Of a stretch of 64,000 nucleotides of DNA, positions 21,149 through 44,015 are shown piece after piece. This DNA comes from Eutreptiella sp. 'Long Island Sound 2002'. Its lineage: Eukaryota > Protista > Euglenida. Within the stretch, counting starts at the first letter, position 1; every line of letters begins with the position of its first letter. Below the pieces are notes generated by a model, which worked only from the letters and a program-made list of their open reading frames with translations, was not told the DNA's origin and did not search any database. The position numbers and the translations under genes are program-made. The stretch spans positions 1,612,001 to 1,676,000 of the forward strand of contig OZ038378.1 of the NCBI GenBank assembly GCA_964036045.1, given 5' to 3'.

Positions 21149-23152
21149 ACGCTCGCTGGTCCGTGCAAAGAGCATTTTTTAATGGCAACGCTGTTGCACT
21201 AGAATGTCAGACAGCACTGGATTATCAACCATGTATTGCCTTGCTGACAGGGAGGAAAAGACATTGGGAAGAGCATTGCGATCCAAAAATTGCCGCAGTG
21301 CGAACCAAGCTGTAGAGTGGTGATGTTGATGGTGATGTTATGTGAATGTTGTTTTGAATGAGATGGGGTGTCACAGAGGCAGCCTGGTACAAGGATGTTA
21401 ACCCATACCCTCACCCAAGGTCTCTGCTCATGGCGCTTGGTTTCCAGTGCGTGGTCCCAATCTCGAACCCCAGGTGGGGCAGAGCACCGGAGGGATCCTA
21501 GAACCAAGGTCCAAATGCAGGAAGGCCCTGTGAGACATACATTCAGGGCAACGCATTGTACATGCAGGCACAAGGCAACACATTGGGGTCGTGTTGGGAG
21601 CCCAGGAATTCGATGGAGAACGTGGTCGCCATGGCAACGCAGCTGCGCACAATCAAAAGCAAGCCGACCGGAAGCGGCCGGAACGTCATTTGACAGGGTT
21701 CAGGCACATGTGGGAAGTGGTGTGTGGTAAAAAGGTGCCGTGGTATTGGACAAGGAGGTGCGTACAGAAAACCAAAGGTCCCCAAATCCTCAGACGCCCT
21801 TGACAAATTCGAGAAAAATGGGGGCATGGGGGGAAATGGAGAACAAGAGGGGGGTTGGGGGGCAGATGAAACTGAGGAGGGGGGAGGGGGAGAAATGCAT
21901 GGGTCCAATGTGCAAAGAGGAAAATGCAGGAAAAAGGAAGGAGAATCCAGCAATTTCCCCAATTTTCGCCGTTTGTACGGCTCCCCAGTTTCCCCATTCT
22001 CGTCTCCCAAAAGGTCTGACTGAAGATTGGCACTTCTCTCACTACAGTCCCCTTCATCAAAATGGTATTTGGGTATCTGCGGTGGGAAAATGGGGGACAT
22101 GCAAGGGATCCGCAGGTACGCAGGAGACATAGTACGTGGGAGGCTTGAAAGGTGTGTTGCGGGCACGGGGGGGGGCGGTCTGACGCGGTCCCACTGCAGT
22201 CCCTTCTTGCTGACTATCAAAAATCCGGGGGGGGGGGGGTTGGGCTGTGTGTGGGGGGGGCGGGGGGGTCTGGCCAGGGGTCGCGGGGGGGGGGGGGCAA
22301 AGGGGGGGAGTCGGGCACCTCCGAACAGTTGGGTATGCGGCCCAGGTGGGGGCAGTCCATATCCCCAACTGGAAAAAGGGGCCAGTCCATAAAGAAAATT
22401 GCCGTAAACATGAAAAAAAAAAAATTTCGGCGCCGTTGGCGCCGCAACCTCTGGACCACTACCCGGGGGGGGGGCTGGGGCGGGGGTTTGGCACAAGGCC
22501 TCAGTATCAGATTGTTTGCCTTTGGCGGCGCCCATTGGCCTCTCGCCACTGCTCATTCTGACCCTCTGTGGGCCCGAACGTGTTTTGGTTGTGTCAACGG
22601 AGCCCCTGGAACTTGTCCTGTTTGACTACTTGACCAGGGCTGGGGGGGGGGGGCATCGCATGCAAGGACCAGCTGCCCCCCCCCCCATGGTTACGGGACG
22701 TGATATGACCCAAACATATGTCGTGGAGCACGAAACGGGGAGTCTAGAGCCCCGTAGTCCTCCATATTGAGCGCTACAATGGGGCTCAAGGCATCAACCT
22801 CTGCTTCCGGAGCGGAGCTGCTTCTGGGCACAGATGGGCCCATGGCCCCGCAGGATTTGGTCACAAATGAGGGGACAGGGGGCCCTGCCATCTGCGAATT
22901 GGGACTGATACCGGGGGGAAGGGGGATCTGTCCGGACTCCATTGCATTTCCATATTTTGTGATGCTATAAACCCTGTCCCAGATCTCAAGACTGCCTGTT
23001 GTAATTATGTTCGGAGGCTCCTCGGCTTGCCTTTGCGCATGGCATTGTGGTATTTCACTTGGATTGGCCTGCCCGCAGTTGTTGGCTGCAACCTGCTGCC
23101 GTACGTACCCGGCCTTAATAATGATGGTAAAAATTGCGTCCAGAAATTTCGG

Positions 23153-26100
23153 TCAGAATTTATTCAACATAATTTTCACCTGAGAGATTCCCCCGCCCCC
23201 CGCCGCGGTATCAGGGCCATCACTGGAACCAGCCCCTCGGGCGTCCTGCCGCAGATCTGAAAATTGTGGCAGATTTGCGGTACCAACTGTTTGTGGTGTT
23301 TGCAGAGGCGACTGGGGGCCCACACTCACAACACAATTCCCACAGAAAACAGACCCACTGTCACTTCGTGGCAGATCTGCAGCTCCAACCGTTGAAATCT
23401 CCGTTGGGGAGCCCAGGGGCGTGCACTGGGGGCCATGGCTCCCATGAGAGGTATCACTGCCCACATTGGAGTCAGGATCTCTCCACCTTTGTGGCTCCGG
23501 AATATCAGGGGTCCCGGGCGTCAGGAGGCAGCCTGCGGGTGGCAAAGGAGGCCAATGAGGGTTAGCCCTTACGGCCATGTGGGCCACAAAGCTCTGCTCC
23601 TCCTGATGCATCTCCACATAGTCCACACAGGCAAAGTGTAAGCTCTCCACGTGGTCTAATACCATGTGCTGGAGGCCGCTGTCAACAGTCAAAATGATGT
23701 GGGCAGCAGCAGCATCAGCTTCCGAAACGTGGAGGTGGGAGAGGGCAGGCATAGCAGCGCTCGACGGTAGCCCTGGCACAGGGGCTGTGCAGCCTCCCTT
23801 CGGAGGGCATTCCGGCCGCTCGACCATTGCGATGTTGTCCACAGAGGCATAGAACTGGCCGATATCGGAGGTGCCATACAATGTGATCTCAAAGATGGTG
23901 TTGGGGCGGAACAGGACCTCGCCTTCATTCGGAAACTTGGAAAAGCGGCTGATGGCCCGTGCAGAGGCCGAATGCAGGAAGAACAGGGACCCTTCGTCTC
24001 CCTTGACGAACTCCTCCGCCACCGCCTGCGTGGCAGACGCGCTCGAGAACGCTGGCCAGCACACCTCCTGGCCTTTGCAGTAGCTGTGCTCGTCGAAGCG
24101 CACATTGATGCCGCGGTACAGCTTCCCGGTGTACGGGGGCAGCATCTGCAGCGAACGGTCCACTTGCCAAATCAGCGGACGCCAAAAGTCTATGGCTTGT
24201 TCGTCGCTGAGCCGCATGGCCCGATTCATAGCTCCGTAGACTTGCTCCCCAGTGCCACCGTCCGGCGGGTAGTCCAACTCGTACGTGTACACGTAAATGG
24301 GAACGATGTACAGTGGGCTGAGGGTGACGCGCTGGCGCCGCAACTCGTGCACCTTCATGACTGCATCCGAACACATCTGCACAAGTGGAGGCAGTGTGAA
24401 CACCAGCCCCAACTCGTTCTCAGGAAGCGCCATTGAAAATGCCAGAGTTCCCACGTCTGAGCGATATTTGACATCGTAGAAAGCCCCCCGTGAGGCGCTG
24501 CTGGGGGCCTGCAATCCATCCGTAAATCTGCTCTCCGCCATCTGCCGATTTGTTCTGCCCCGATCTCTGGGGCGCGTGGCCCCAAGCGGGGCGTCCCACC
24601 CCAGTCCCGCTGCACCATCAGGGACAGCGAAAGCAGAAGCCAAGAAATCCTGGAGCACATTTTGGAAAAGCTGCTGCTGAGCATTCGTCTGCGACTCCCA
24701 AGCCCTCGCCTCGGGGTCATGGGATGCAGGCTGCCACAGGGACGGATCGATCACTCCCTCTTCGGATAGTACGGCCAGCGTCTGTCGGTCCGGGGCTGAG
24801 GTGGCAATGGAGCCGGGGTCGAATAGCACCGCGGCCTCGTCCCAATTGAGGTTTGTGTCGGGGCAGCTGGTGACAGCCCATTCTGACCCCTGCACGGGAT
24901 ACTGGACCATCGTCTGGAGCTGGCAGCGCATGCTGCTCACGTAGCCACCCACGTGATGCTGCCTAGCCTGCAGGTCAAGAACGACGGTGCGGTTCTCGTA
25001 GTCCACAGTAATATGGTCCTGGCCCGCCTTGAGGGCCTGACCGACCTGCTGCTGGAGGATGTGGGGGTAGGTGTTCCAGAGCCCGTTGCCGATGTGGTGC
25101 TGCCACACCAGACTTTGGGGGTAATGCGCCTGGTATTGCTGCATCACGTACCGGACCATGGCCGTGTCCCCGGACCGCGCAGCCGCCTGCATCAGGCAGA
25201 TGGCATGGGGGACCTTCTTCAAGCCCATCCCCTCGGGCGATAACAGTGTGACCGCTGTTGGATCTTTTGTGGGCCCATCCGCTGCTTCATTGCCGTGAAC
25301 TCTGGCAGCATCGTGTTGCGCTGTTGGCACAGCTTCGCTGGGGTGAAGCGAATTGCTCGCAGTCTTGCGGCTCGCAGTCTTGCGAACCATGCCGCGGACG
25401 ACACTCATGAGCCCGTGCACGATGCGGACATGCCTCGGCCGGGTGGCGTCCCCCCTCAGCCCCGGTGCCGGTTTCCCACCGGCGCATGCATCGGTCTCTG
25501 CATCATCCGGAGGAGGCATGGCACAAGGAGGATCCAAGCAGATGCGGGTCTTCGGCGACCCGCAGCCCAGGTACGTGGACAGACACCACCCCGCCGCATG
25601 CCTCTCCTTGGCACTGGGCTCATAGTAATAGATGTACTGCCCCGTGGAATGCCCGATGTAGACTTGCCTCCCGTTGTAAGTCAGCGGCGCCTGGCGCACG
25701 TACAGATCGTTCGTCCCCCGCCCCAGCGAGGTGATCAGCAGGCTGTCCACTGTCGCCCAGTCCCGCTCCCGGCAGAACACGTCCGGCAAACCGGACTTGC
25801 GCTCAAGCAGCGTCTGAAGTGCAGGCAGGTTTTTCGCCATAGCAGCCGAGTGCCTTGCGCTGGGGGCCCCTGGCAGCGGGTGGACATCGATGTCCGGGCG
25901 CATGGCCAACAACGTCCGCATGCTGGCCTCGCAGCCTTCCTGCACGGTGGCCTCCAGCATGCACGCCAGCTCGTAATCGGTGCCGCCTCGGGCCTCGGCC
26001 CAGGTTGGGGCATACTGCGGGTCCGAGCACACCGCCCGGCAGTGTGCCTCCCAGCACGAGCCGTGGTACGGCCGGTCGGGGGGCGCATGGGCCCATCGGT

Positions 26101-29100
26101 CTAAGACCACAGGCTTGCCGCACTGCACACAGCGCACGCAGCGGGTGTGTCCCTTCTGGCGTACTGTGGGCTGGAGCGTGGGGTGGGGGGTATACGCAGG
26201 TGGCAGGGACGTCCCTATGAAGCGCCAGTTGGACGTGGGCCGCCCGCATGCGGGGCAGTCATGTGGGCTATCTTCGCGAGCGGCCAGCAGCCCGAAGATC
26301 CCCAGGAGGACGAGGCCCACTGCTGCAAGAACCAGCCCAAACACCTCTGCAAAGGAGCCCGGGACGTTGGAATGCCGCATGGCCATCAGCAGAACGTACC
26401 AAACAACGCCGAACACAATCAGATGGACCCCCAGGGCCAGTGCAGCCTCAATCCAGGGATTCGACCATCGTGGGTGGCGGGGTCTACCCCAAGAAGGCGT
26501 GGCCCAGTGGTCACGCGGAACAGGGGAAGCGGCCATGCGCTTCGCATGCCATCGGCCCAGGACAATCACGCATGGCATCGACCCAAAGGTGACCACGGCC
26601 AGAAATATCACAATCAGTGATGACGCCGTGAACTCCACGACAACTTCAGCCGCAAATGCGGCAGCGGTGGGCTGCCGCTGGCGGCGGACGGCGGTTGTCG
26701 GAGGGTGGTACATCACCGAGAGTTGGAGGTCCTGGGAGCCCACTGGCAGGGCATCCTTCCTCCCAACGTCCACTGGGCTGTAGCTTCGGGTGCAGGCATC
26801 ACAGGCTGGACAGCCCCCGCCTTCCTGCTGGCAACCAGAATCCAGTCGGATGGTTGCAGTGCCGTCCAGGGCCACAATGACAATGGAGATCTTTTTGCTC
26901 TGAAACGCCGTAGACCCTGTCCCAAGAGTGACCGACTCAAAGCACTGAGTAGCCCCTGCCTGCAGAGTCACCGCCCCAGCTACTGCCGAAGCGGTCCCGT
27001 TACTGCAGGGCGCAAGCTCTGCTGTAGCACTGGCGCTTGCCGTGCCCGTGGGCAGTGCTGTGGTTGTGAGAGACGGCGTCGGTGTCAGTGGTGCGGAGAT
27101 GGACGTAGATGTGGTGCAACTTGGGGTCCACGTTGAGCTGGGGGTCGGAGTTGTGGTCCTGCTGGGGCGGGGGGAAGCAGTGGCGGATGGGGTGGGCGTG
27201 CTGCTGGCGGTGGCAGTGGGCGAAGCAGTGAATGAGATAGTGGGGGTGAGGGGGTAGGTAGATGATGGCGTGCAGGTTCGTGTGCATGTTGTGCTGCAAC
27301 TCCAAGTCTGGGAGGGACTTGCAGTGGGGCGTGGGGTCGTAGTGATGCTTGGAGTAGAGGTGGCGGTGGGGGACGTCGTGTGGGTGCTGGTTCTTGAACT
27401 GGTGGCGCTGGCAGTGGGCGAAGCTGTGAAAGATGGTGTGGGGGTTGGTGTAAGGGTGACGGAGCGAGAGGGAGTGCCGGAGGTGGACGGGGAGGGTGTG
27501 CCTGTGGGGGAAGAGGTGGTCGTCGGGCTGGGGCTGGCCGTGGGCGAAGGGGTCGCTGAAAGCGACGGCGTAGGCGTGGAACTACCGGTGTTGGTGCCTG
27601 TGGTCGTGGGCAGGGGTGTCACGGACGCGGTGACAGTGGGGGTAGGGGTGCGCGTCGACAGGAACATGCTGTGGCTGCGCCCGAACGCAAGACTGTAGAT
27701 CATGGCGTCGTTTGGCGGGTCCAGGCGATGTGGAGCCCCTCTGTTCACTCGGTCTTGCAGTCCCAATTGACCTCTCCCATTGAGGCCCATGGCATACCAG
27801 ACCCCGCCAGGCGACACGGCGGTCGTGTCCTCCCCGGCCACAATGGCAGTGATGGGGAAGCCTGCCGACGGGGAAGGCAACAAGTGGGGCGTGTGCCGGG
27901 GTACCCGGTCCCCAAGCCCCAGTTGGCCGTGGGCGTTGGCCCCCATGACGAAGCACTCGCCGCCCGCGAGCAGGACCGTGTGGCGTCTGCCGAACGCAAT
28001 GGCGGTGATCGGCACGGCGTTGGGGGCTGCCAGCCGCTGCGGCGCGTTGCGGTTCAGCAGGTCCCCCAGCCCCAACTGCCCCGCGGTGTTTCGTCCCATC
28101 ACGAGGCACTGCCCGTCCGTCAGGATCGCCGTGGCATCGAACCCCAGCACCAGCGCCGTGATCGGCCGCGCCTCTGGCGGCTGGGGCACGGGCTGGGGCG
28201 TCGCAGCGTCGGTGTGGTGCCCCAGACCCAGTTGCCCGTGGAAGTTGTCGCCCACGATGAACCACCGCCCGCCCGCCTGCGCGGCGAAGTGCGCCGCCCC
28301 CATCGCGATGGCGGTGACGGACGCGCCGTTCGGGGGGGGCAGCAGCTGCGGCACGCCGCGGTCCGCGAAGTCCCCGGTCCCCAGCGTGCCGAACCGGTTG
28401 CGGCCCATCACGAAGCACAGCCCGTCAGCCGCCAGCACCGCGGTGGCGTCCGCCCCGGCCGCCACGGCCGTCGCGCGCGCCCCGTTCGGCAGCACCAGCG
28501 GGTGCGGGGTGCGCCGCAGCACGGCGTCCCCCAGCCCCAACTGCCCATACGTGTTCTGGCCCACGGCGTACGCCTGGCCATCCGCCAGAAACACCGTGTG
28601 GAACGCGCCCAGGGCCATCGCATGGACCGGCTGCTGGTTTGGTGCCACCAGAGCCTCGGGGCGGAGCCTGTCCCTGTGGAGGAAGCCCAGCCCCGCTTGC
28701 CCAAGGTGGTTGTCCCCCACCACATGGCAGTCCCCCCTGGCCACCCCCGGTTGCAACGCCAGGTCCGAGACGGCCAGCCCCCCCCCCGGGGCCTGCGGAG
28801 GTGACGGCCGTGAACCGGACCCGTGTGCCAAGGCCCAGGAAGGCCACCCGCTGCCGGACCCACCCCTGGCGAGGGCCGTGCGGCCACGCGCCCATGCGCC
28901 GCCACACCTCCCCCCAGGCGCGGTCAGCGCCCGCCTGCACCTCCACCGCCAATGCCCCCGGGCCAGCCCGGTACCGGAAGTGGATGCCGGCGTACACCCC
29001 GACTTCGGACACAAGGTACGCCGTGCTCTGGGGCCCTGGGGCCGCACTCGCGTTCACTGCGAGGTACGGCCCCCTGCTTCCCCCCACCGGCGGGCCACTC

Positions 29101-32100
29101 GTGGCGCCGGGGCCCACCCGCTGCCACAGTACGTCCCCCCCGGCGGCGCGCCAGAGGCCCCGGCAGAATGTGGTGGTGCCCGTGGCGACGGAGAGATCAC
29201 ACTGCAGATCCTTCATGTGGGCGGCGGGGCTTGCCCTCGGGCCAAAGAGCACCACGTTGGAAATGGCCGCCTCGCTCAGGTCCCCCTCCCCCGTCACCCC
29301 CACGAAGCGCACGCGCTTCGCCAGCCCCGCAAACGCGACCGTCTCCGACCGCCACGACTCGCCGCGCGAGCGCTGCTGCGCCGCTTCCCTTCTGAACACC
29401 TCCGCCCAGTCCCCACGCTGCATCAGCACCCACACAGCGAGGGAGCCCATGGTAGCGCCGTACATGTGGTAACTGAAGCGGACCCCGGAGTACAGCCCCT
29501 GTCGGGACGTGAGGCGCACGGACCGGCCGTAGTGGCGATTCACACGGGTGTACACGTACGCCCCTCCGTGGGCGTAGGGGCCTGAAGGGGGGCCCGTGCC
29601 AGGCGTCGGGGTCCCGCCCCCCGCCACCTGCACCCACTGCGGCCGCCCCGGGTCCGGCTCCGTGGTCCACAGTCCTCCGCAGAACCGCGTGCCGCGCTCC
29701 ACACCGGAGAAGTCGCAGAACACGTGCCCCCCGCAGGCGGGGCAGGAGCCCCCGCAGTCGACCCCGGCCTCGTCCCCGTTCAGCACCCCGTCGGTGCACG
29801 CCGTACAGGCGGCACACGACCCGCCGCAGTCGACCCACACCTCGTCCCCATTCTGCGCCCCGTCCGCACAAGACGGGCCTCGAGGGACGTCCCACAATCG
29901 CACGGTGTGGTCCTGCGAGCCGGAGAGCGCCTTGGTGCCGTCGTCGGAGAACGCCACCCACTCCACGCCCATGCCGTGGCCGTACCAGGCCACGGAGGTG
30001 CCGGTCTCCACGTCCCAGTACCGCAGGGACCAGTCCCAGGAGGCCGACAACGCCTGGCGGCCGTTCGGCGCGAACGCCACGCACCGCACACTCCCGGCGT
30101 GGCCGGACCACACCACGAACGACCCGGTGCTGACATTCCACAGCCGCACGGCGGTATCCTCGGACCCGGACAGCGCAAGTTTCCCATCCCGTGAGAATGC
30201 CACCGTCACCACAGCGCCGGTGTGCCCCCTCCACTCTTCGGAGGTCCCGCCCGCGACGTCCCACAGTCGCACGGTGCCTGACTCGGCCCCGGACAGCGCT
30301 TTGCTGGCGCCGGGGGACAGAGCCACCGAGGTCACGATGCCGTCGCGCGCGTCCCACTGGGCCACTTCGGACCCGCTCGAGAGCCGGTACAGCCGTAGTC
30401 GGTGATCCTCCCGGCCGACCAGCAGCAAATCCTTCTCCACCGACACAGCGACGGCCGACACCTGGACACACGCAAAGCAAATTTCAGGCATCCAAAATCC
30501 GTCCTGCCCCAACGGCAATGGCGAGGATTGCGCCGATGCGGGATACCACTCGCGCATGTTGGAACGGTCCCAGGAAAATGCCCTGGGAGAACGCCCGGGC
30601 AAAAAGCTCACAAACCGCACCTCCGACCGACTACCGGTCCACACGACGGACGTGCCCCCGCTCACGTTCCACAACCGGACGGTCTTGTCGTCCGAGCCCG
30701 ACAAGGCCTCGGCCCCGTCCTGTGAGAACGCGACCGCCCGTACAATCCCCGTGTGGCCGGACCACACGACGGAGCTGCCGCACGCCGCGCAGGACCCGCC
30801 ACAGTCGACCCCCGCCTCGTCCCCGTTCAGACGCCCGTCGCGGCAGGTGGCGCACACCGCCGCGCACGAACCTCCGCAGTCGGCCCCGGACTCGTCCCCG
30901 TTCTGCGTCCCGTCAGCGCAACTCGGGGCACAAGCCGAGCAGGCGCCCCCGCAGTCGACCCCCGTCTCGTCGAAATTTTGGGTCCCGTCCGTGCACCACG
31001 TCGCGGCCGCCTCGACGTCCCAGAGCCGCACCGCAGCGTCTGCGGCGCCGGACAGCGCCTGCGTTCCCGAGGGGGAGAAGGCCACGGAATACACGGCCGC
31101 AGTGTGGCCGGTCCACTGGACAAACGTGCGTGTCCTTAGATCCCACAGTCTCACCATCCCATCACCCGAGCCGGATATGGCCCTGGTCCCATCGGCGGAG
31201 AAGGCCACGGAGAAAATCACATCGCCGCCGCCACTCAAGACTTCGTGCTCCCCGGTCTTCGTATTCCAGATTCTAAGGGTGTCATGGCCGGACAGCACCT
31301 CGGTACCATCAGGCGAGAAGGCGAGCGAATGCGCACCACCCGCCCAGACCACCGACGTGCCAGTGCTGACTTCCCAATACCGGATCTCATGCCCGTCGCT
31401 GGACAGTACGTGGGTCCCGTGTGGCGAGTAGGCCACACACACAACTGCATGGTCCAAGTCAATCCACGTTGTGCGCTGGGTTGTGTTCGTGTCCGTGATG
31501 AGGTCCCATACCTGCACACGCCCCAGGGTATCCCCAACCGCCAGCTTAGTTCCATCGGGGGAGAAAGCCGCGCAGAGAACGCTGCAGTCGTACTTCGCGT
31601 ATATGTGTATACGCGCCCACAATTACTCGCTCAGATGTGCCTGTTCTGACGTTCCAGCGTCTCAGGCCTCGGCCAATAGCGGAAGACAGTGCCTCGTCTC
31701 CATCGGGGGAGAAAACTGCAAAATACAGTGGAGTCGTATGCGCCATCCACACTTCAGATGTCCCATCTCTGACGTCCCAGAGCCTCACACTGAAATCCTC
31801 GGAGCCAGCAGCTGACAGCGCCATAGTGCCATCTGGAGAGAAACTCACCCACTTCACCGGACCAGTGTGGCCAAGCATAGTCTTCGATGGACCACACACG
31901 GTGCACGACCCACCACAATCCACGAAACTTTCATCACCATTCAACACGCCGTCTTGGCACCCGAGGCTGCAGGATCCGGTGTATGCCCAGGATCCCGAGC
32001 TGAAACAAGTTGCGCGTGGTCTACCTATGTACCCCACCTCACATGAGACACTGCAGGAACCACCATAAGTCTGGTTATTCCCAGTGCAGCCATGGAACAC

Positions 32101-34827
32101 CCAATGCGACTGGATTGGTACGCCACAATCAGCCTCAAGTGAGGGTGGAGTACCCGCGTATCCGAAAACCTCTACTTCGGCCAAATGAAAAGATCTCGGA
32201 TCAACGTGGTCCAAATGGACCACAACAAACTTGACACCAGCCACATCGACGTACCTCCATGGGTACCACAGCGCGGTTGTACCAAACCACCTCGATGCAA
32301 CCTGGTGGCCCGCACTGTCCAACAACTTGATCCAGAAGGGGTTGGCCTCCCATCGGTCGTCCCGTGTAATGGTGTTCCATACGACGACCTTCTGAACGAA
32401 AGAGGCCTCAGCAAGCGTAATTTTTAACCGCGGTCTGACCCTCTCCGTACTCGACGCCTGTGTGAATTTGTTGCCATCTACAGCGTTCATAGCCCAATCG
32501 ACGTGTTCCGTAAATTGGTTCAGAGCTAAATTCAAAACTGTAGGGAGCGATGGCGATGGCGATGGCGATGGCAATGGCAACGGCGGCAGCGAAGGGTTTA
32601 GACCTGTCTCATCAGCTGAGCACTCACAAATGGCATCAGAAGTGCTTCCAAAGCTGATTGAGCATGATCCAGTCGATTGAACAGTGCAACTGTCACTGCT
32701 CTCCTCCCACGCCCCCACACATTGCCTGCCAAATGATTGGCAGTAGTTATCACACAGCCCTAGGTACGTGCTCGCCATGTTGTTCACCAACACCCTGCAG
32801 TCACCACATACCAGACCATGGTCCACGTCAGGCCAGTTCACCTCAGCGACGCAACGATCCACACCAGAACTGCTACTGTCACATGTGACAGTAATGCCCC
32901 AGCCCTCGACATAATGATTCTCCCACGCAGGAGAGAGATCAATGACAGTCAATGTCCAATCTCCAGCGGCAGGCAGATCCTTGAATGCTGTGAGGCTTTC
33001 TTCTGGACGCCAATATCCCGCGTCTTGTCCCCCATTATTTGCAATGCTTGCTGCAGCATCGTCATCAAAGACGATGAGGACACCGTGCCAGCTTGCGGCT
33101 CCGTGCAGGGATCCCATCAACAAAACATCTGCCACACCCAGGTGTGACAATTTAATAACAAGGTCCGCAGACCACGTCCCGATGAGTTTCATGAACACAA
33201 TTACCTTTCTAACATTTGAACTGCATTCTTCAAGTGTCACCGTAACAGTATCTGTTTCACTATCTTGTGATGCAGAAGCTGAAGCTGAAGATGAAGATGA
33301 GGAGGTCGAGGTATCATCTGATTCCCACCCAACACTTAGCTGGGGTGAACCATACCTGGTGATAGTGGATCCAGAGTCAGCCCCAGGCCGGTAGCACATA
33401 TACTCTTGCGCAGATCCCTTGGTGCCTCCAACATCCACAACTCCCAAATAGACAACGCATCGCGCACGTCCAACTAATTCGCAGCCATCGGAACTGGACA
33501 ACGGATGCGCAGCATACGCAATCCCCACGCACATGGTCATGCACTTGGCGATGCACTCACTGTAATGGTCGACACATGAAGCCATGGAATCATATGGACT
33601 CGAGCAGGAATGGCAGTCTGCTTCTCTACAACAGCCAATTCCAACGTAGTTGAACCCTGATCGGTCTGTGCAGGCCGTCAAACCGGCCCACAATCCACCA
33701 GCTCCACAAACGGCATCACCACCACCGATATATCCGGCATCACATGTAACAGTAACAACGTCTCCAGTAGAGCCAGAGATAGATCGAAGTGCTGCATGAT
33801 CGGAGTTGTCCACTTGTGTTGAGGGACAAGGCCCTGGCACTGGCACTGTAAAACTATGATTAGAGCCGGACCCACTGACGCCACTACGGTCAATAAGAGC
33901 GATTTCGCCCAAATACACGTCAAACGTGCCTCCATTCCAGCCGGCACCAGTTGAATCTTTGGCCTCGAAAATGTGCTCGCCAGGAACCAAACAGACCGAC
34001 TGCGTGGATCGTTCCACCCAGCTGTAGGTGCCGAATGCAACACCAACCGGGGGCTGCAGTCCACTGATGGTCCACCCAACCTGACCAGCGGACCCAACCG
34101 ATTGGATCCCAACTATCACCTTGACACACCCTGTGCAGTCCGTCAAACCGGCCCACAATCCACCAGCTCCACAAACCGCATCACCACCACCGATATATCC
34201 GGCATCACATGTAACAGTAACAACGTCTCCAGTAGAGCCAGAGATAGATCGAAGTGCTGCATGATCGGAGTTGTCCACTTGTGTTGAGGGGCAAGGCCCT
34301 GGCACTGTGCAGGCCGTCAAACCGGCCCACAATCCACCAGCTCCACAAACCGCATCACCACCACCGATATATCCGGCATCACATGTAACAGTAACAACGT
34401 CTCCAGTAGAGCCAGAGATAGATCGAACTGCTGCATGATCGGAGTTGTCCACTTGTGTTGAGGGACAAGGCCCTGGCACTGGCACTGCAAAATGGTATTT
34501 TGCAGTGTCAACGACGTCCACACGATTGATGAGAGCTGTTCCGCCCAAATGCATCTCAAATGAACTGATGTGAAATGTACAGGTACCAAGTGTGCTCATC
34601 TCAACAGTGTGGTCGCCAGGAACCAAACAAATCGACTGACGGAATTTTCCCGCATCATCATCATCATGATAACGGTGTGCAACACCAACAGGAGGGAGCT
34701 GCGGTCCAATTATGATCCAGCCAAACGCACACGCCACAGGCATTCGAACCTCAACGGTCACATTGACACATCCTGTTGCTCCCACACTTGATACCAGCAA
34801 GAGGATGAATAAGACAACGATGCTCAT
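23153..34827 (-). CDS. Giant receptor-like transmembrane mono-ADP-ribosyltransferase (~3,890 aa), interrupted by two +1 frameshifts (~31600 and 28778-28787)
   Basis: Three overlapping long minus-strand ORFs (31546-34857, 28425-31622, 23153-29047) join in the middle of domains: a WD40 repeat at ~31600 and the MAM C-terminal xAVSDLxL motif at ~28780. 34827-23153 is 11675 nt; minus 2 nt gives 3891 codons. Signal peptide [17 protein letters not shown]. Confidence 0.82.
23821..26262 (-). other. Cytosolic tail: LIM-like Zn finger, ankyrin-like repeats, WWE domain (~24915-25112), R-S-E class ADP-ribosyltransferase domain (~23821-24300)
   Basis: [18 protein letters not shown] (LIM spacing); [14 protein letters not shown]; [23 protein letters not shown] (WWE); [37 protein letters not shown] (ART R, SxS and ExE motifs). 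Confidence 0.82.
26285..28777 (-). other. RCC1/BLIP-II repeats (~27660-28750), Thr/Pro/Ser mucin-like stalk (~27030-27650) and three predicted TM helices (~26285-26625)
   Basis: Repeated GxNxxGQLGLG..AIAxGxxHT units; TPTPTPS-rich tract; hydrophobic stretches [44 protein letters not shown] and [22 protein letters not shown]. Confidence 0.82.
28788..31599 (-). other. Ectodomain segment 2: WD40 repeats interleaved with CxDGxxNGDExxVDCGGSC repeats, then two MAM-like domains
   Basis: Many GHxxxVxxVAFSxDGxxALSGSxDxTVRLWD units, four CxDG..N.DE..VDCGG units, and CDFSG..W..GTGP....[23 protein letters not shown] (MAM). Confidence 0.82.
31600..34827 (-). other. Ectodomain segment 1: signal peptide, two CV.V...CL.PG.H repeats, 3 Sushi/CCP-like repeats, Cys-rich (PAN-like) units, proprotein-convertase P-domain, F5/8C/fucolectin-like domain, Sushi, Cys repeat, start of WD40
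   Basis: [11 protein letters not shown]..[33 protein letters not shown] x3; [31 protein letters not shown]; [28 protein letters not shown]; [19 protein letters not shown]; VSFSPDG. Confidence 0.72.
33667..34479 (-). repeat. Three near-identical 174-bp Sushi-coding DNA repeats (33667-33840, 34132-34305, 34306-34479)
   Basis: TGTGCAG(G/T)CCGTCAAACC...GGCCCTGGCAC occurs three times with only a handful of substitutions. Confidence 0.93.
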
Positions 34828-34833
34828 CGTGTT

Positions 34834-34853
34834 CTGGAAAGAAAAGAAAATAG
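34834..34853 (-). promoter_or_regulatory. Putative (trans-)splice acceptor: polypyrimidine tract + AG, 6 nt before the ATG
   Basis: The minus strand reads CTATTTTCTTTTCTTTCCAG|AACACG-ATG-AGC. Confidence 0.6.
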
Positions 34854-35844
34854 ACATTCAGAAAGTGATCAAAGCAACTGGCACAAATTGCTTAATGATG
34901 GAACGTGTACCTCAGTTGTCATTTCCGAAAAACATATACCCATTATGAAAGAGCGCCTCCGGTGATGTAGCATCACATGCTGTGCCCTTGCATGCCACTG
35001 GCCAAGTATGGGTAAGGTTGACCCCAAGCCCTGCCCTTTCCCACATCCTTTTTTCCACAAAACCTCCAAAGAATCACGGGCGTCCACAACAGCAAGAAAT
35101 GATGGCGGATCTTTGTAGCCGCAAATCCATCGCCAATGGGCACCACTCACTCCGTGCGTCTCTATGGCAGGCATGTGGATACCACTTGCTACCTATCGAT
35201 GTCCTACCCCTGTGCTATCCTGTTCCCCACTCTCGTATCGCCCCGAAAACCCACCTTTACTTGACTTGCTTGTGTTTGACTATGTTCTGTCCAGTCCACA
35301 TGTTCCAACACAACCTGGCACCAACGCTGATCTCTTGCTGGCATATGGTACATCAACTACTTCACCAACACAAACGCCCCAACAAAACAGTCAGAACATA
35401 TGCAATGATTGCATCTGGGCACAAATTCGAGCCTGACATGTGCATGATGCTGGGGACGCTCCACAGCTCGAAGGGGAATCTGAGAGCAACCGAACGGCGT
35501 GCACACCGAAATATTTCTCCATTATTTTCACCTCAAATCTCTTGAGTATGTGATATGGAGCCGAAGCTGTGTTCCAATCAGAACCAGCAGAGGGGAACAG
35601 CCAAGGGACTGACCGCATACCGGAGCGCAGACCACTCCAGGTCACGCCAGCCCTCAAAGGGTGCCACACTCCCCCCTAGACCACAGTGACATTTCTGATA
35701 TGTGGCATGGGTGTGCCCAAGCAATGGTTGCCCAATTGTGCTATGGGTTCACGGTCTATGCTGCCAATCTTAGTCTGCATCGCTGTGATTCCATGCTCTT
35801 ATCCATAAACGCGTTCCTTGAACATCCCCGCCAGCAGATGATTG

Positions 35845-40684: not shown

Positions 40685-41490
40685 CTAGGATTCCGTGCCC
40701 CTGCCCAGGCACAACACTCCACGGAAATGAACAACCAAGGGGTCCTGCAATAACGGCTTATAAATGAGCCAAGCCATACAGACGGCTTTCAGCCGATCCC
40801 CTCGGTTTTCCCCCTCCAAACGAGACATAGGGTCTGCAGGTTGGAATCCAGTGGGCACCCAAAGAACCCGCACAACAATGCCTAAGCAGACTGGGCGCCG
40901 CGCCAGACCACGCAATACTGATTGCTGGGCATCCAATACACTCTTGGACCGCACTGTTAGTTGCTGGGCGATGGCCACCTCCGAGTCACTCACGAGCGTG
41001 ACTGTAGTATAACCCAGACGGGGCGCCAGGCGCACCCTCCAGACCAGGGACTGTAGCTCCACAAGTCGCTTACTCTGGGATCTCACACGTCGGGGCACCA
41101 CAGATCGGACGCCCAAAAAATCCGAGAAGCCCCCCATTCTCCACGACAACCCGCCATGGGCCCCGTCAACAAATAACACCAGACCTGGCCCCTCCCACCA
41201 CCGCCCCAGCAGCATCTGGTCAGTCCTGTGCATGCCCAAGTCCAGACACAGGGTCTGCACACCCGCCACTGGGGCACGCCACGGCTCCGCAGACATGGCA
41301 TGCAAAACGACCAGGGACTCCAAAACCGCCACAGGGGTATGCCCAACCTGCTCCCCGTTGGGCCAACAGTAGGCCCCCGCCGCAAAAGGACACGCCAAAC
41401 CGCGGGGTTGCACCTGCCAATGGACGAAACCCAAAAAGGACTGCATAAGCCGTTTTTGTGACCGCCACACCGCCAACCTAAGCCACGCGA
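40685..41490 (-). pseudogene. RT C-terminus + DIRS-type RNase H
   Basis: KRLMQSFLGFVHW (thumb), then LFVDGA..LVELQSL..LVSDSEVA..LWVPTGFQPADPMSR (D-E-D-D of RNase H). The RT catalytic core is absent. Confidence 0.8.
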
Positions 41491-42187
41491 CGCACTGCGT
41501 GGGCACTGCGTGCGCACTGCGTGCATACTGCGCACGCAGAGGCCGGGATACTCACCCAAGAATACCTGTCACCTGACTAGTTGCACAGCTAAGCAGCAAA
41601 GCCCACATGACAACGATGAAACTGCCTTCAACTTGGTACTCCACTGTCCCTATGAACAAACCACTCAGCCTTGTAAAGTCCGCTTGCTTCGAGTGTTTCG
41701 GTGCCCGTGGCTTCGCTCTTGGAGGCGGCGATGAGGTGTCCCTTGACTCGGAGCACGGGGAACGCGTTGTCCGTGGTCTCTTGGGTGATGGGGACCGCGA
41801 ATAGGGTGAGGGGAGGGCGGTGGTGATTCTGAGCGTGGACGCGACACACTTGTTGATGGCGAGCGAGATCAGTGATGTGGTGGGGATGAAGGCCGTACCA
41901 CAAACTCCTCAAGGTCCGCGGGCTATGTATGGCTACATCACCCCTGCCTTCTCGGGGTCCCCATAGTGGGGAGAGTTCAATATGGGGGATGGAAAATGGG
42001 TAAAAATGGTTGACATTGGGCAACAAAGGGTGACAATTCAAATGTGCCACATCCCAAATGCATAGGAAGCTAAAAAAAACCCAGTATGGAACCAAAAACT
42101 TGTCAAAAGGGGCCAAAAGTAGGGTCTGAGTAATGGCCGACATTCAAAACTTCGCACTGCGTGCGCACTGCGTGCATGGCATTCCCC
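41491..42187. mobile_element. ~700-bp non-autonomous insert (MITE-like) at the position of the missing RT core
   Basis: The 11-bp unit GCACTGCGTGC occurs x3 at the left end (41492-41524) and x2 at the right end (42154-42175), followed by ATGGCATTCCC. A homologous right end is present at ~46300-46394. Confidence 0.6.
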
Positions 42188-42919
42188 AAGGCGGCCGTAG
42201 GGAGGCGGAAGTCTTCGGCCGTGTCGAAGACACGGTCTACGAACGGGGTAAGCCTCTTCACCAAAATTCAGGGGTGCACCGGAGGTCAGCAGAAAGCCAA
42301 CCCAGGTGGGGGGTGCAGGCCCTCAAAAAATCCACAAACAGGGGGTCATTGGATTCCTCACACACACCCCCTTCCCACAGCTCAAGCTGCGTCACGGGGT
42401 CACGGGGGGGGGGGGGGGTCGAACAAGTCCTCCGGACCTGGCAGCCAGCCTCGAAAGGTCAACCAAGCTGGGGGACAACGAGCCCTCCGCCTGTGGGACC
42501 TTCGGGCCGAATCACATGCGCTTCGCTGGTGGGCCAGCCGCGACTACGGCTCGGGCCACTCCAACTGTCCTAGCCACACCGACCCCGACGGTATCACGCC
42601 CGACCCCCTCCGTTGCAACACCCATCACCACCGGCGCGCGAGCCGCGCACGTCTGTAGATGCACGGCACCACCCAGCACACCAGTGGGCCTGCCCCATGG
42701 TTTAAAGCCGAGCACCGGCCTTTTAGCTGGGCAGCTCCAAGTCGATCCGCCTTCCCGCCTGCGCCCATGGAACTTGGACCGGGGCGGGTGCGAGCCCCAA
42801 GGGCGAAAGCAGGCTGTCCCCCTTCATGGTGCACCTAATCGACCCCCCCCCCTCCTCGGACCCGGAGCTGTCACAGGAATCGACAGTAACGAGTCCGCGG
42901 TCTCCTGGGGGCCTGTGGG

Positions 42920-44015
42920 GGTCAGTGGGGGGGGCAGGGGGGGGGGGCGGCGGCGGTGGCTCCGGCGGTGCCCGAGACACTTGACTTGCCGTGAGACCCC
43001 CCTCCCTCTCGGACTCCCGGTTTGGGGGTGGGGTCGAACAGGTCCTTAGGCCAGCCGGGGGGGGGGGGGTGAAATGTAGCCGGGGGCAGGGGTTCAGCTG
43101 TTGCGGGGAACATATTGGGAGCCCAAATATCCAAGTGCGTGAACACCCTGACCTCCCCCCCTGCTCCCGCCTCGAGAGGCAGTCGAAGAGGGCCCACGAC
43201 CGCAGCGTCTTGGAACGTTGTCGCATATCACAGGGCCATGCCGACACTACGCCACCTCCCCCACCAAAGGAAGAACTACATCTAGGGGTGGCGAGCGTAA
43301 CACGCAGTGCTGCCACCCCTTCGCACAGCATGCCACCGGCGGTGCCTCCAAGGCGTCGGACCCACGACCTCCAGGAACTTGTGCTCCAGCCACGCACTGC
43401 CCCCAAGAAACAAGTGGTCGCTTGCTTGCAGTCCCTTGGCCTCGGCCCATCGGAACAAGGCTTCCCGGAATCCATCCGCCCATGGGGAGAGTGGTCGCGG
43501 CTGCCACCCCTCCTCTCCCATTTTCTAGTTCCAGAACTGCATCCACAGAGGCAACGAAGCTAGAGAATTCACCAACCTTGAGCCACGGAACCCAACCGAG
43601 GACTGCCACACAGGCCATCGGCAATGCACCACGGTGCAACTCAGCTCTCTCCACTGGGGCGCACAGCCCCTCAGGGGGCAATCAGGGCCGGAAGCCCACC
43701 CGGGACGTTGCCTGTGCGATGCGCTTGTGCAGCTGTTGGACGACAGGCCCAACCCATCCAAGATCTTCAGCGGCCCGCACCGCCGCATTATACCCACGCA
43801 GGGTGGATTGTCTCTCCCCTGCCTCCGCCTTGGCTGCCAGGAACTCCGCAAGTACCCCAGCCAGCGACACTTCTCTAGTGGCATCCTAGAATTCTACGAT
43901 CTTAGCGAGCTTCTGCGCGTACACTTTGCGGGTCCCGGCCCTCCACGACCTAGCGGCCCAAGCATCAGGACCGCTGGGTTCGTCCTCGTTCCCCAGCATG
44001 CACCAGCGGGACCGG
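42920..44015 (-). pseudogene. Tyrosine recombinase with stops and frameshifts
   Basis: QSTLRGYNAAVRAAEDLG, WLKVGE, PLSPWADGFR, WHAVRRGGSTA, WWGRWRSVGMAL*Y; collinear with the YR at 10.2-11.7 kb. Confidence 0.8.

What the first reader, a model, noticed from the sequence alone, without database searches (positions are those of the whole stretch)
23153..34827. Giant multi-sensor transmembrane receptor ending in a toxin-like ADP-ribosyltransferase
A single ~3,890-aa reading frame joins an unusually diverse ectodomain (Sushi, P-domain, F5/8C-like, WD40 propellers, Cys repeats, 2 MAM, RCC1 propeller, mucin stalk) through three TM helices to a cytosolic R-S-E ART with an ExE motif. A signal peptide plus 3 TM would place the ART in the cytosol, unlike GPI-anchored vertebrate ecto-ARTCs. 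I do not recognise this architecture from any described family. It suggests a receptor that signals, or triggers defence or cell death, by ADP-ribosylation, analogous to a receptor kinase. The domains are seen in sequence; the function is inference.
Basis: partly seen in the sequence, partly recalled or inferred. Interest (0 to 1): 0.88.

Follow-up and report, generated by a model that had tools for sequence, protein, structure and literature searches.

The report
Giant euglenid receptor-like ADP-ribosyltransferase gene copy
This alga's DNA holds one, probably recently broken, copy of a large and undescribed euglenid family of giant surface proteins whose inner end carries an enzyme that tags proteins with ADP-ribose, plus a domain that reads that tag, so the family may be a new kind of signalling receptor.

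Summary
Three minus-strand ORFs in three frames (34857-31546, 31622-28425, 29047-23153) are separated by a palindromic insert near 31600 and by a run of ten G at 28778-28787. Contigs from three public runs show both breaks unchanged.

Confirmed: signal-like N-terminus, Sushi, WD40, two MAM, an RCC1 propeller, a Thr/Ser/Pro stalk, three TM helices, and a cytosolic tail. The tail holds an eight-ligand Zn finger, ankyrin repeats, a WWE fold and a PF01129 ART. The P-domain and F5/8C calls are weak.

The ART has invariant R, S-x-S and E-x-E residues. Its model matches HopU1, Tre1, Vis and rat ART2.2.

The same tail occurs at about 65 or more loci in this 2.28-Gb genome. Several lie in uninterrupted ORFs of 5,500-7,500 codons with different ectodomains. 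It also occurs in transcripts of Euglena gracilis, E. longa, Peranema and Jenningsia.

I found no paper describing the family. This scan had already noted it on other DNA of this genome (s1-222726, s1-228004).

A receptor-type arginine ADP-ribosyltransferase is the best reading of the family, but it is inference. This copy is probably a young pseudogene.

The parts
34771..34857 (-). ATG and signal-peptide-like hydrophobic N-terminus (ORF A residues 1-29)
   Evidence: Hydropathy peak 2.59 over residues 1-35. Paralogues and the E. gracilis transcript start the same way.
33666..34492 (-). Three near-identical 188-nt Sushi/CCP modules, with an unassigned beta-rich module between them
   Evidence: Pfam Sushi E 1.1e-5, 26.1 bits against cut-off 20.7. 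Direct repeats at 93-98% identity.
32863..33285 (-). P-domain-like module (weak)
   Evidence: PF01483 E 0.0069, below cut-off. A paralogue has PF01483 at 3.2e-7 just before its RCC1 propeller.
32143..32535 (-). F5/8 type C-like lectin module (weak)
   Evidence: PF22633 E 0.1 only. The paralogue on C20 has PF00754 at 3.1e-13.
31978..32100 (-). Fourth Sushi module
   Evidence: PF00084 E 7e-6, 26.8 bits.
29874..31905 (-). Two blocks of WD40 repeats separated and followed by Cys-rich repeats (motif DG-x2-NGDE-x-G-x-DCGG-x-C); break 1 lies inside the first block
   Evidence: PF00400 E 1.6e-67, 8 stretches. The Cys repeats have no Pfam family.
31590..31626 (-). Frame break 1: perfect palindrome (8-nt arms, 4-nt loop, 31596-31615) inside a WD40 repeat; ORF A stops at 31546-31548
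   Evidence: Sequence. Fold -20.5 kcal/mol, z -1.59. Not a repeat family: 6 near matches in 2.28 Gb. Present unchanged in contigs of X1-X4.
29247..29699 (-). MAM domain 1
   Evidence: PF00629 E 6.1e-13, 49.4 bits.
28748..29225 (-). MAM domain 2, split by break 2
   Evidence: BLASTP to MAM 1 E 8e-11. Its last strand continues in the frame of ORF C.
28778..28787 (-). Frame break 2: run of ten G on the minus strand, where the frame changes from ORF B to ORF C
   Evidence: No indel in the contigs of X2-X4. MAM 1 and MAM 2 are colinear across it, so there is no room for an intron.
27557..28729 (-). RCC1-like beta-propeller, the membrane-proximal ectodomain module shared by the family
   Evidence: PF00415 E 4e-62, PF25390 E 8e-65. 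Same position in paralogues and in E. gracilis P0019.
26948..27556 (-). Thr/Ser/Pro-rich mucin-like stalk
   Evidence: 203 residues: 62 T, 43 S, 33 P.
26273..26635 (-). Three transmembrane helices with an Arg/Lys-rich loop after TM1
   Evidence: Hydropathy peaks 2.65, 2.36 and 2.76. Loop 1 has 6 K+R, loop 2 has 1. Conserved in 17 of 18 aligned family members.
26051..26257 (-). LIM-like double zinc finger (CxxC...HxxCxxCxxC...HxxC)
   Evidence: C135, H168, C174, C177, H196 and C199 are invariant in 18 sequences. No Pfam LIM hit. Foldseek to a LIM domain only at probability 0.66.
25763..25996 (-). Ankyrin repeats (about two)
   Evidence: Family profile against PDB finds ankyrin proteins, E down to 6.7e-20. 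Foldseek gives ankyrin hits. Pfam Ank in 3 of 18 members.
25541..25747 (-). Conserved beta-rich domain of unknown kind, followed by a disordered, variable linker
   Evidence: Alignment A2/A3. Model pLDDT about 90 for the domain and about 30 for the linker.
24869..25123 (-). WWE domain
   Evidence: Pfam in this copy only E 0.012, but 10 of 18 members hit, best 8.9e-7. Model matches WWE domains of TRIP12 (TM 0.80), HUWE1 (rmsd 1.4) and RNF146.
23813..24553 (-). R-S-E clade mono-ADP-ribosyltransferase domain. Catalytic codons: R 24113-24115, S 24041-24043, S 24035-24037, E 23924-23926, E 23918-23920
   Evidence: PF01129 E 3.1e-12. R, S, S, E, E invariant in 24 sequences. AF2 pLDDT 85.9. Foldseek to HopU1, Tre1, XopAI, Vis, ART2.2. 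Profile to Vis 6.6e-16 and ART2.2 1.3e-11.
23153..23812 (-). Non-conserved C-terminal extension and stop codon (23153-23155)
   Evidence: No family conservation beyond the ART. No Pfam family.

Best explanation
The locus is one copy of a large family of giant membrane proteins specific to euglenids. Each member has four parts:
- a cleavable signal;
- a long, member-specific ectodomain built from adhesion- and recognition-type modules (here Sushi, WD40, Cys repeats, MAM; in paralogues SRCR, PAN, LCCL, FN2, F5/8C, EGF, TSP1);
- a shared membrane-proximal RCC1 propeller, a glycosylation-type stalk and three TM helices;
- a conserved cytosolic tail: eight-ligand Zn finger, ankyrin repeats, an unknown beta domain, a disordered linker, WWE, a small alpha/beta domain, and an R-S-ExE ART.

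Shown: the architecture, the topology logic, the ART and WWE folds, the invariant catalytic residues, the family size, and its presence in transcripts of four other euglenids.

Inferred mechanism: binding at the variable ectodomain changes the state of the tail, by clustering or by a conformational change. The ART then transfers ADP-ribose from cytosolic NAD+ to arginines of nearby cortical or signalling proteins, or of itself. The ExE motif is that of arginine-specific enzymes. The WWE domain binds the ADP-ribose product and so holds or regulates the complex. In short, a receptor enzyme whose output is mono-ADP-ribosylation.

This particular copy carries two frame breaks in its ectodomain part and is most likely a recently inactivated member. 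Its tail is still as well conserved as those of intact paralogues.
For: Domains: Pfam.

Topology. The ectodomain has 95 Cys and 8 N-glycosylation sequons. The ART has 3 Cys, none invariant.

Family size: about 65 near full-length matches to the family-specific Zn-finger/ankyrin/beta module, 151 matches in all. More than 40 loci match the whole tail at 35-55% identity.

Intact members: single ORFs of 5,993, 7,554, 5,675 and 5,511 codons; the first three start with a signal-like N-terminus. Their ectodomains differ, but the RCC1 propeller always precedes the TM region.

Transcripts elsewhere:
- E. gracilis EG_transcript_4: 5,356 aa with a signal-like start, EGF, TSP1, RCC1, 3 TM, WWE and ART.
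- E. longa, Peranema (WWE plus ART) and Jenningsia.

Catalysis: R, S-x-S and E-x-E are invariant in 24 sequences.

Folds.

Possible erasers: 24 matches to ADP-ribosylglycohydrolase PF03747 in the genome.

This copy's tail deviates at 9 of 160 conserved columns, inside the range of its relatives.

RNA-library contigs from an estuary match the gene at 99% or better.
Against: - No ligand, target or enzyme activity is known for any member.
- Both frame breaks stand in contigs of three runs, and the metatranscriptome contig that reaches break 1 runs through the insert, so this copy may make no full-length protein.
- The kind of runs X2-X4 (DNA or RNA) is not on record.
- TM helices and the signal peptide rest on hydropathy only.
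- WWE in this copy alone is below Pfam's cut-off.
- WD40 and RCC1 propellers are unusual outside the cell.
- The ART could act as an NAD+ glycohydrolase rather than a transferase.
Confidence: 0.55

Rival explanations
1. Pseudogene only. The locus is a dead copy with two frameshifts and has no function of its own. What matters is the family, not this gene.
For: - Three frames, with the breaks inside a WD40 repeat and inside the last strand of MAM 2.
- The G run leaves no room for an intron, because MAM 1 and MAM 2 are colinear across it.
- The insert at break 1 does not fit the Euglena nonconventional splice signature N3-CDG...CH'G-N5-6|R (PMC12501133).
- That insert is shorter than any intron recorded in E. 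gracilis, where minima are 30-41 nt (PMC11170887).
- Contigs of X2-X4, and the X1 contig that reaches break 1, keep the breaks.
- Other family loci also carry stop codons.
- The gene's product is absent from the public protein library, where the best hit is 48% identical.
Against: - All three ORFs stay open for more than 1,000 codons.
- The tail is as conserved as in intact paralogues.
- All catalytic residues are kept.
- RNA-library contigs match the locus.
- An intact allele, or a tiny intron at break 1, cannot be excluded with contigs, which drop rare variants.
Confidence: 0.65
2. Innate recognition or defence repertoire. The family is a set of pattern-recognition receptors. Its ART, once triggered by a pathogen, prey or non-self ligand, disables the cell's own proteins or depletes NAD+, giving abortive death or a shutdown response rather than ordinary signalling.
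For: - Large lineage-specific expansion with tandem arrays.
- Ectodomains are shuffled from modules typical of animal innate receptors: SRCR, MAM, LCCL, PAN, F5/8C, Sushi.
- Recent internal module duplication at 93-98% identity.
- The nearest solved relatives of the ART are toxins and effectors.
Against: - No test of diversifying selection was made.
- There is no link to infection.
- The tail has regulatory modules (WWE, ankyrin, Zn finger) and the genome has possible erasers, which fits reversible signalling as well.
Confidence: 0.2
3. Adhesion or pellicle-associated structural glycoproteins. The giant ectodomains serve attachment, gliding or cell-cell contact, and the ART tail only tunes the underlying cytoskeleton locally.
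For: - Mucin-like stalk and adhesion-type modules.
- Very large size.
- Presence in gliding heterotrophs such as Peranema.
- Several bacterial R-S-E ARTs act on actin or small GTPases; this is established knowledge of C2/iota, SpvB and C3, which are among the fold matches.
Against: - About 65 or more paralogues with unrelated ectodomains are more than a structural role needs.
- The conserved part is the enzyme tail, not the ectodomain.
Confidence: 0.15
4. Ecto-enzyme. The ART faces outwards, as in vertebrate ARTC proteins, because the topology is other than predicted.
For: PF01129 is the family of vertebrate ecto-ARTs, and rat ART2.2 is among the best matches. Topology rests on hydropathy only.
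Against: - Three TM helices after a signal peptide put the C-terminus inside.
- The loop after TM1 is strongly positive.
- The tail holds a Cys/His zinc finger, ankyrin repeats and WWE, all cytosolic-type modules.
- The conserved disulfide cysteines of ecto-ARTs are absent: no invariant Cys in 24 ART sequences.
Confidence: 0.04
5. Assembly or gene-model artefact. The three ORFs are separate genes, or a chimeric join, not parts of one gene.
For: Three frames. No read-level RNA evidence of one transcript.
Against: - A WD40 repeat and a MAM domain each continue across a break.
- One contig of public runs spans 24002-33695.
- Paralogues and an E. gracilis transcript hold the same order of parts in one ORF.
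Confidence: 0.03

Closest known systems
Vertebrate ecto-ADP-ribosyltransferases (ARTC1-5; rat ART2.2, PDB 1GXY)
   Same: Same Pfam family PF01129. Same R-S-ExE catalytic motif and the same fold. Predicted arginine specificity.
   Different: ARTCs are small, GPI-anchored or secreted, work outside the cell and have conserved disulfides. Here the domain is the cytosolic C-terminus of a protein of about 3,900 residues with three TM helices, has no conserved Cys, and is preceded by WWE, ankyrin and Zn-finger modules.
Bacterial R-S-E mono-ART toxins and effectors (Vis, HopU1, Tre1, XopAI, SpvB, ExoS/T, C3)
   Same: These are the best sequence-profile and structure matches (Vis E 6.6e-16, HopU1 Foldseek E 3.9e-10). 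Same ExE or QxE ARTT loop logic.
   Different: Those are secreted or injected into other cells. This is an endogenous, membrane-tethered domain of a eukaryote, conserved across Euglenida.
Receptor enzymes: receptor kinases, receptor guanylyl cyclases, and the receptor-type adenylate cyclases of trypanosomatids and Euglena
   Same: Variable ectodomain, membrane span, cytosolic catalytic domain, and lineage-specific expansion. Ebenezer et al. 2019 describe such cyclase and kinase expansions in E. gracilis (PMC6366073).
   Different: The output chemistry would be ADP-ribosylation. There are three TM helices rather than one, and the chain carries its own reader domain. No receptor function has been shown.
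WWE-containing PARPs (PARP7, 11, 12, 13, 14) and the WWE E3 ligases RNF146, HUWE1, TRIP12
   Same: A WWE fold that binds ADP-ribose derivatives lies next to an ART-superfamily domain in one chain. The WWE model matches TRIP12, HUWE1 and RNF146.
   Different: PARPs have the H-Y-E/I (diphtheria-toxin-like) catalytic domain. Here the partner is an R-S-E (cholera-toxin-like) ART, and the protein is membrane-bound.
Rotifer WWE + PF01129 proteins (ESM Atlas clusters named putative NAD(P)(+)--arginine ADP-ribosyltransferase)
   Same: Same pair of domains, WWE then ART.
   Different: These are short (about 320-350 aa) and have no listed membrane or ectodomain parts. The feature score of 0.79 is only a lead, and kinship was not tested.

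Membership tests
PF01129 / R-S-E clade mono-ADP-ribosyltransferases | Match to the family model above the curated cut-off | tested here: met
   46.7 bits against 22.3, E 3.1e-12. 17 of 18 family tails match.
PF01129 / R-S-E clade mono-ADP-ribosyltransferases | Catalytic Arg, Ser-x-Ser and Glu-x-Glu motifs | tested here: met
   R147, S171, S173, E210 and E212 are invariant in 24 sequences. Codons located.
PF01129 / R-S-E clade mono-ADP-ribosyltransferases | ART fold | tested here: met
   AF2 pLDDT 85.9, pTM 0.83. 112 PDB matches at E <= 0.001; the 50 best listed are all mono-ARTs.
PF01129 / R-S-E clade mono-ADP-ribosyltransferases | NAD+-dependent ADP-ribosyl transfer | not testable with these tools
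   Needs an enzyme assay.
Ecto-ARTs (ARTC class) | Extracellular catalytic domain, GPI-anchored or secreted, with conserved disulfides | tested here: not met
   The ART lies C-terminal to three TM helices, among cytosolic-type modules, with no invariant Cys. Filed as a relative by domain, not as a member of this class.
WWE domain | Match to PF02825 above cut-off | tested here: inconclusive
   This copy scores 16.4 bits against 21.1, E 0.012. 10 of 18 relatives match at E <= 0.01, best 8.9e-7. E. gracilis, E. longa and Peranema members are above cut-off.
WWE domain | WWE fold | tested here: met
   The top Foldseek matches of the tail model are WWE domains: TRIP12 TM 0.80, HUWE1 rmsd 1.4, RNF146 rmsd 1.5.
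WWE domain | Binding of ADP-ribose or iso-ADP-ribose | not testable with these tools
   Needs a binding assay.
LIM domain | Eight Zn ligands with LIM spacing, and a match to the family model | tested here: inconclusive
   Eight conserved Cys/His in a LIM-like order, but the first spacer is 32 residues. No Pfam LIM hit in any of 18 members. Foldseek to CRP LIM only at probability 0.66.
Receptor enzymes | Ectodomain, membrane span and cytosolic catalytic domain in one chain | tested here: met
   Met in intact paralogues and in E. gracilis P0019. In this copy it is met only if the two breaks are read through.
Receptor enzymes | Ligand-dependent change of catalytic activity | not testable with these tools
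   No ligand is known.
Euglenid nonconventional intron (as an explanation for break 1) | Signature 5'-N3-CDG ... CH'G-N5-6 | purine, and removal from mRNA | tested here: not met
   The insert has no CDG/CH'G pair (against PMC12501133). Candidate lengths of 25-34 nt lie at or below the shortest introns reported (30-41 nt; PMC11170887). The one RNA-library contig that reaches it runs through the insert and ends at 31592. The arms do pair, with 5 unpaired bases at the 3' side, so the geometry is similar.

The most novel reading that the evidence does not exclude
Euglenids possess a class of receptor enzymes not seen elsewhere: transmembrane mono-ADP-ribosyltransferases. A repertoire of 65 or more variable ectodomains gates a cytosolic arginine-specific ART, and a built-in WWE reader closes a writer-reader loop. 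ADP-ribosylation would then serve as a primary transmembrane signalling currency, comparable to phosphorylation by receptor kinases.
Probability: 0.35. Interest if true: 0.88.

Novelty: new variant of a known kind. Interest (0 to 1): 0.7.

Why it matters
Mono-ADP-ribosylation by R-S-E enzymes is known in eukaryotes mainly as an extracellular reaction of vertebrate ecto-ARTs, and otherwise as a weapon of bacterial toxins. A conserved and much expanded family would point to something different: it tethers such an enzyme to the cytosolic face of the membrane, under a giant variable ectodomain, and pairs it with an ADP-ribose reader. That would be an endogenous signalling or recognition system built on this chemistry in a free-living protist lineage.

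The question is testable. Euglena gracilis has full-length transcripts of the family and, as PMC12501133 shows, accepts genome-editing knock-ins.

The family would also help explain part of the large coding capacity and sensory versatility of euglenids. For this locus itself the result is more modest: it is probably a young dead copy.

Tried and rejected
- Word-indexed protein search. It was tried three times and gave nothing usable: whole tail, 1 hit; family-specific region, none; alignment A3, none. These blanks say nothing. The exhaustive search found 1,901 relatives.
- Exact look-up of ORF A's product.
- Break 1 as a repeated element. Rejected: the palindrome has only 6 near matches in the genome, against 1 for the reversed control.
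- Break 1 as an intron. Candidate excisions of 25, 28 or 34 nt would each keep the frame. None fits the published Euglena signature or length range, and the one RNA-library contig that reaches break 1 runs through the insert and ends at 31592. A palindromic footprint-like insertion is equally possible. Left open.
- Break 2 as an intron. Rejected, because MAM 1 and MAM 2 align residue for residue across the G run.
- LIM assignment by Pfam. No hit in any member.
- Second MAM and Cys repeats by Pfam. No hit. MAM 2 was accepted from the pairwise match.
- Bridged protein. All searches and folds used the pieces separately.
- Aravind et al. 2015 review of ART natural history. It could not be read, so an earlier passing mention of such architectures cannot be excluded.
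- Species name. My own evidence shows only that the nearest outside relatives are euglenids.
- Runs X2-X4. Their kind is not on record. I treat them as most likely genomic DNA, because they hold contigs up to 133 kb and millions of short ones. They are therefore not evidence of transcription.
Full report
**What is in the sequence**

On the minus strand there are three long ORFs: 34857-31546 (1,103 codons, ATG start), 31622-28425 (1,065) and 29047-23153 (1,964). Together the pieces give about 3,920 codons.

Break 1 sits inside a WD40 repeat. ORF A runs into a perfect palindrome (8-nt arms, 4-nt loop, 31596-31615) and stops at 31546-31548. The repeat continues in the frame of ORF B.

Break 2 sits in a run of ten G at 28778-28787. 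ORF B carries the second MAM domain up to its last strand, and the strand continues in the frame of ORF C. The second MAM aligns residue for residue with the first across the G run, so there is no room for an intron there.

**Are the breaks real?**

Three runs of 2024 with the organism's own label hold every sampled word of 23500-33499. In two of them a single 9,694-nt contig is colinear with the window from 24002 to 33695, without gaps or differences. In the third, two contigs cover both breaks.

The kind of these runs is not on record. Their contig profile looks genomic, so I count them as DNA. Both breaks are therefore in the sequenced DNA, although contigs cannot exclude a rarer intact allele.

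An estuary metatranscriptome (an RNA library) has three small contigs at 99% identity or better, at 31592-31780, 32123-32273 and 32291-32525. The first runs through the palindromic insert and ends at 31592. No spliced or corrected form was seen.

The insert is not a repeat family. It does not carry the Euglena nonconventional splice signature N3-CDG...CH'G-N5-6|R (PMC12501133). The candidate excisions that would keep the frame (25, 28 or 34 nt) lie at or below the shortest introns recorded in E. gracilis, 30-41 nt (PMC11170887). Its arms do pair and leave five free bases at the 3' side, as in such introns. A tiny intron therefore remains possible, and so does a palindromic footprint-like insertion.

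Taken together, this copy is most likely a young pseudogene, at about two in three. It is young because all three ORFs remain open and because its tail deviates from the family consensus at only 9 of 160 conserved columns, within the range of its relatives.

**Domains outside the membrane**

Pfam confirms Sushi, many WD40 repeats, one MAM and an RCC1 propeller.

- The second MAM is a diverged repeat of the first.
- Three Sushi modules are 188-nt direct repeats of 93-98% identity.
- The P-domain and F5/8C calls are weak here, though paralogues have clear ones.
- The Cys-rich repeats are obvious in the translation but match no Pfam family.
- The stalk is 68% Thr, Ser or Pro.

**Domains in and inside the membrane**

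A signal-like N-terminus and three hydrophobic helices are found by hydropathy. The loop after TM1 has six Arg/Lys and the next loop has one.

With a cleaved signal this places the whole C-terminal 1,040 residues in the cytosol. That fits their content, which alignment of 18 family tails and the models show in this order:

1. Eight conserved Cys/His in a LIM-like order. Pfam gives no LIM hit in any member, so I call it a LIM-like zinc finger only.
2. About two ankyrin repeats. The family profile finds ankyrin proteins in the PDB down to E 6.7e-20.
3. A conserved beta-rich domain of unknown kind.
4. A disordered, variable linker. One paralogue has a C2 domain inserted there.
5. A WWE domain.
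6. A small alpha/beta domain.
7. The ART.

WWE is below Pfam's cut-off in this copy (E 0.012), but it is found in 10 of 18 relatives. The AlphaFold model of the tail (pLDDT 75.6) matches solved WWE domains of TRIP12, HUWE1 and RNF146 best of all PDB chains.

**The enzyme domain**

- PF01129 matches at 46.7 bits against a cut-off of 22.3.
- In 24 aligned family sequences the Arg, the Ser-x-Ser and both Glu of E-x-E are invariant. Their codons are located.
- A profile of the family finds Vibrio Vis toxin (6.6e-16), rat ART2.2 (1.3e-11), Tre1, HopU1, XopAI, SpvB and ExoT among solved structures.
- The model (pLDDT 85.9, pTM 0.83) has 112 PDB matches at E <= 0.001, and the 50 best listed are all mono-ARTs.
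- No Cys is invariant in the domain, unlike the disulfide-bonded ecto-ARTs.

**The family**

The genome is 2.28 Gb in 2,317 contigs.

- At least 150 loci match PF01129 above its cut-off.
- The whole tail matches more than 40 loci at 35-55% identity.
- The family-specific Zn-finger/ankyrin/beta module matches 151 places, about 65 of them over nearly its full length. These include tandem arrays on contigs C20 and C12.
- Four members lie in uninterrupted ORFs of 5,993, 7,554, 5,675 and 5,511 codons. The first three begin with a signal-like N-terminus.
- Their ectodomains differ: SRCR, FG-GAP, MAM, PAN and P-domain in one; MAM, LCCL, FN2 and a farnesoic-acid-methyltransferase-like domain in another; F5/8C in a third.
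- In the two checked to the membrane, C12 and C20, the RCC1 propeller precedes the membrane region and the ART ends the protein.

**Relatives in other euglenids**

An exhaustive search of 1.84 billion representatives gives 1,901 relatives, 119 of them below 1e-30. The 30 whose sources I looked up come from a genome assembly and from transcriptomes of Euglena gracilis, E. longa, Peranema trichophorum and Jenningsia.

E. gracilis EG_transcript_4 encodes 5,356 residues. It has a signal-like start, EGF, TSP1, RCC1, three hydrophobic helices, WWE (above cut-off) and ART. The Peranema fragment has WWE and ART.

So the architecture is real, transcribed, and older than the split between phagotrophic and photosynthetic euglenids.

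**Function**

Nothing is shown beyond structure. The best-supported mechanism is a receptor enzyme:

- ligand binding or clustering of the variable ectodomain regulates the tethered ART;
- the ART modifies arginines of cytosolic or cortical proteins, or of itself, using cytosolic NAD+;
- the WWE domain binds the product.

Possible erasers exist: PF03747 has 24 matches in the genome. A defence or recognition repertoire, or a role in adhesion and the pellicle, are variants that the data do not separate. An outward-facing enzyme and an assembly artefact are unlikely.

**Comparison and novelty**

By domain the tail belongs to the R-S-E clade and to PF01129, but it fails the defining features of the ecto-ART class. 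It works most like a receptor enzyme, though ligand-dependent activity is untested.

WWE next to an ART-superfamily domain is known from PARPs. WWE next to PF01129 also occurs in rotifer protein clusters of the ESM Atlas (a lead only).

I found no paper describing the membrane-bound family. The E. gracilis genome and transcriptome paper that produced the transcripts does not mention ADP-ribosylation. The 2015 review by Aravind and colleagues could not be read.

Earlier notes of this scan describe the same family on other DNA of this genome (s1-222726, s1-228004) and the same stretch from another window (s1-228246). I re-derived their main claims independently here.

**Verdict**

- Observation: partly confirmed.
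- Interpretation: partly supported.
- The family is a new variant of a known kind, a receptor enzyme with a new output.
- The locus itself is probably a recently broken member.

Noticed in passing
whole genome (G000): PF01129 ART domains are greatly expanded. At least 150 loci score above the cut-off, from 364 first-look candidates, in ORFs from about 130 to 7,554 codons. Many must have architectures other than the one studied here. For example, E. gracilis EG_transcript_309 (P0137) matches this tail's ART region near its N-terminus and carries eleven WD40 repeats.
   Followed up: partly
G000:C20:17798133-19080246, G000:C20:1188918-1291613 and G000:C12:23963813-24224144: Tandem arrays of family members or fragments. 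There are about 20 diverged copies of the Zn-finger/ankyrin module on C20, four near-identical full tails about 25 kb apart at C20:1.19-1.29 Mb, and five copies on C12.
   Followed up: no
window 33666-34492: Three 188-nt Sushi-module repeats at 93-98% identity. Contigs of runs X2-X4 show alternative joints here (33853 to 33972, and 33999 back to 33666), and all three read C instead of G at 33712. This could be repeat collapse or copy-number variation.
   Followed up: partly
window 49704-51173 (-): A 490-codon ORF with a DDE_Tnp_4 (Harbinger/PIF-type) transposase domain, E 6.1e-7.
   Followed up: no
window 21546-22556 (-), 40688-41506 (-), 42726-43475 (-), 55095-56006 (+), 59143-59961 (-): Five ORFs of 250-337 codons with no Pfam family at E <= 0.001. 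The first lies just downstream of the ART gene.
   Followed up: no
paralogue P0003 (2,372 aa), cytosolic linker: One family member has a C2 domain (E 2.3e-6) inserted in the disordered linker between the beta domain and WWE. This hints at Ca2+ or lipid regulation of that member.
   Followed up: no
ESM Atlas: Rotifer protein clusters of about 100 members each combine WWE and PF01129 ART in chains of about 320-350 residues.
   Followed up: no
window 25541-25747 and homologous positions in A2/A3: A strongly conserved beta-rich cytosolic domain (invariant D, G, Y, G-W, L-G) folds confidently but matched no Pfam family and no top PDB hit.
   Followed up: partly
giant paralogue ORFs, e.g. G000:C20:7307747-7330408: ORFs of 5,500-7,554 codons run without any interruption in a lineage known for abundant conventional and nonconventional introns (PMC12501133).
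   Followed up: no
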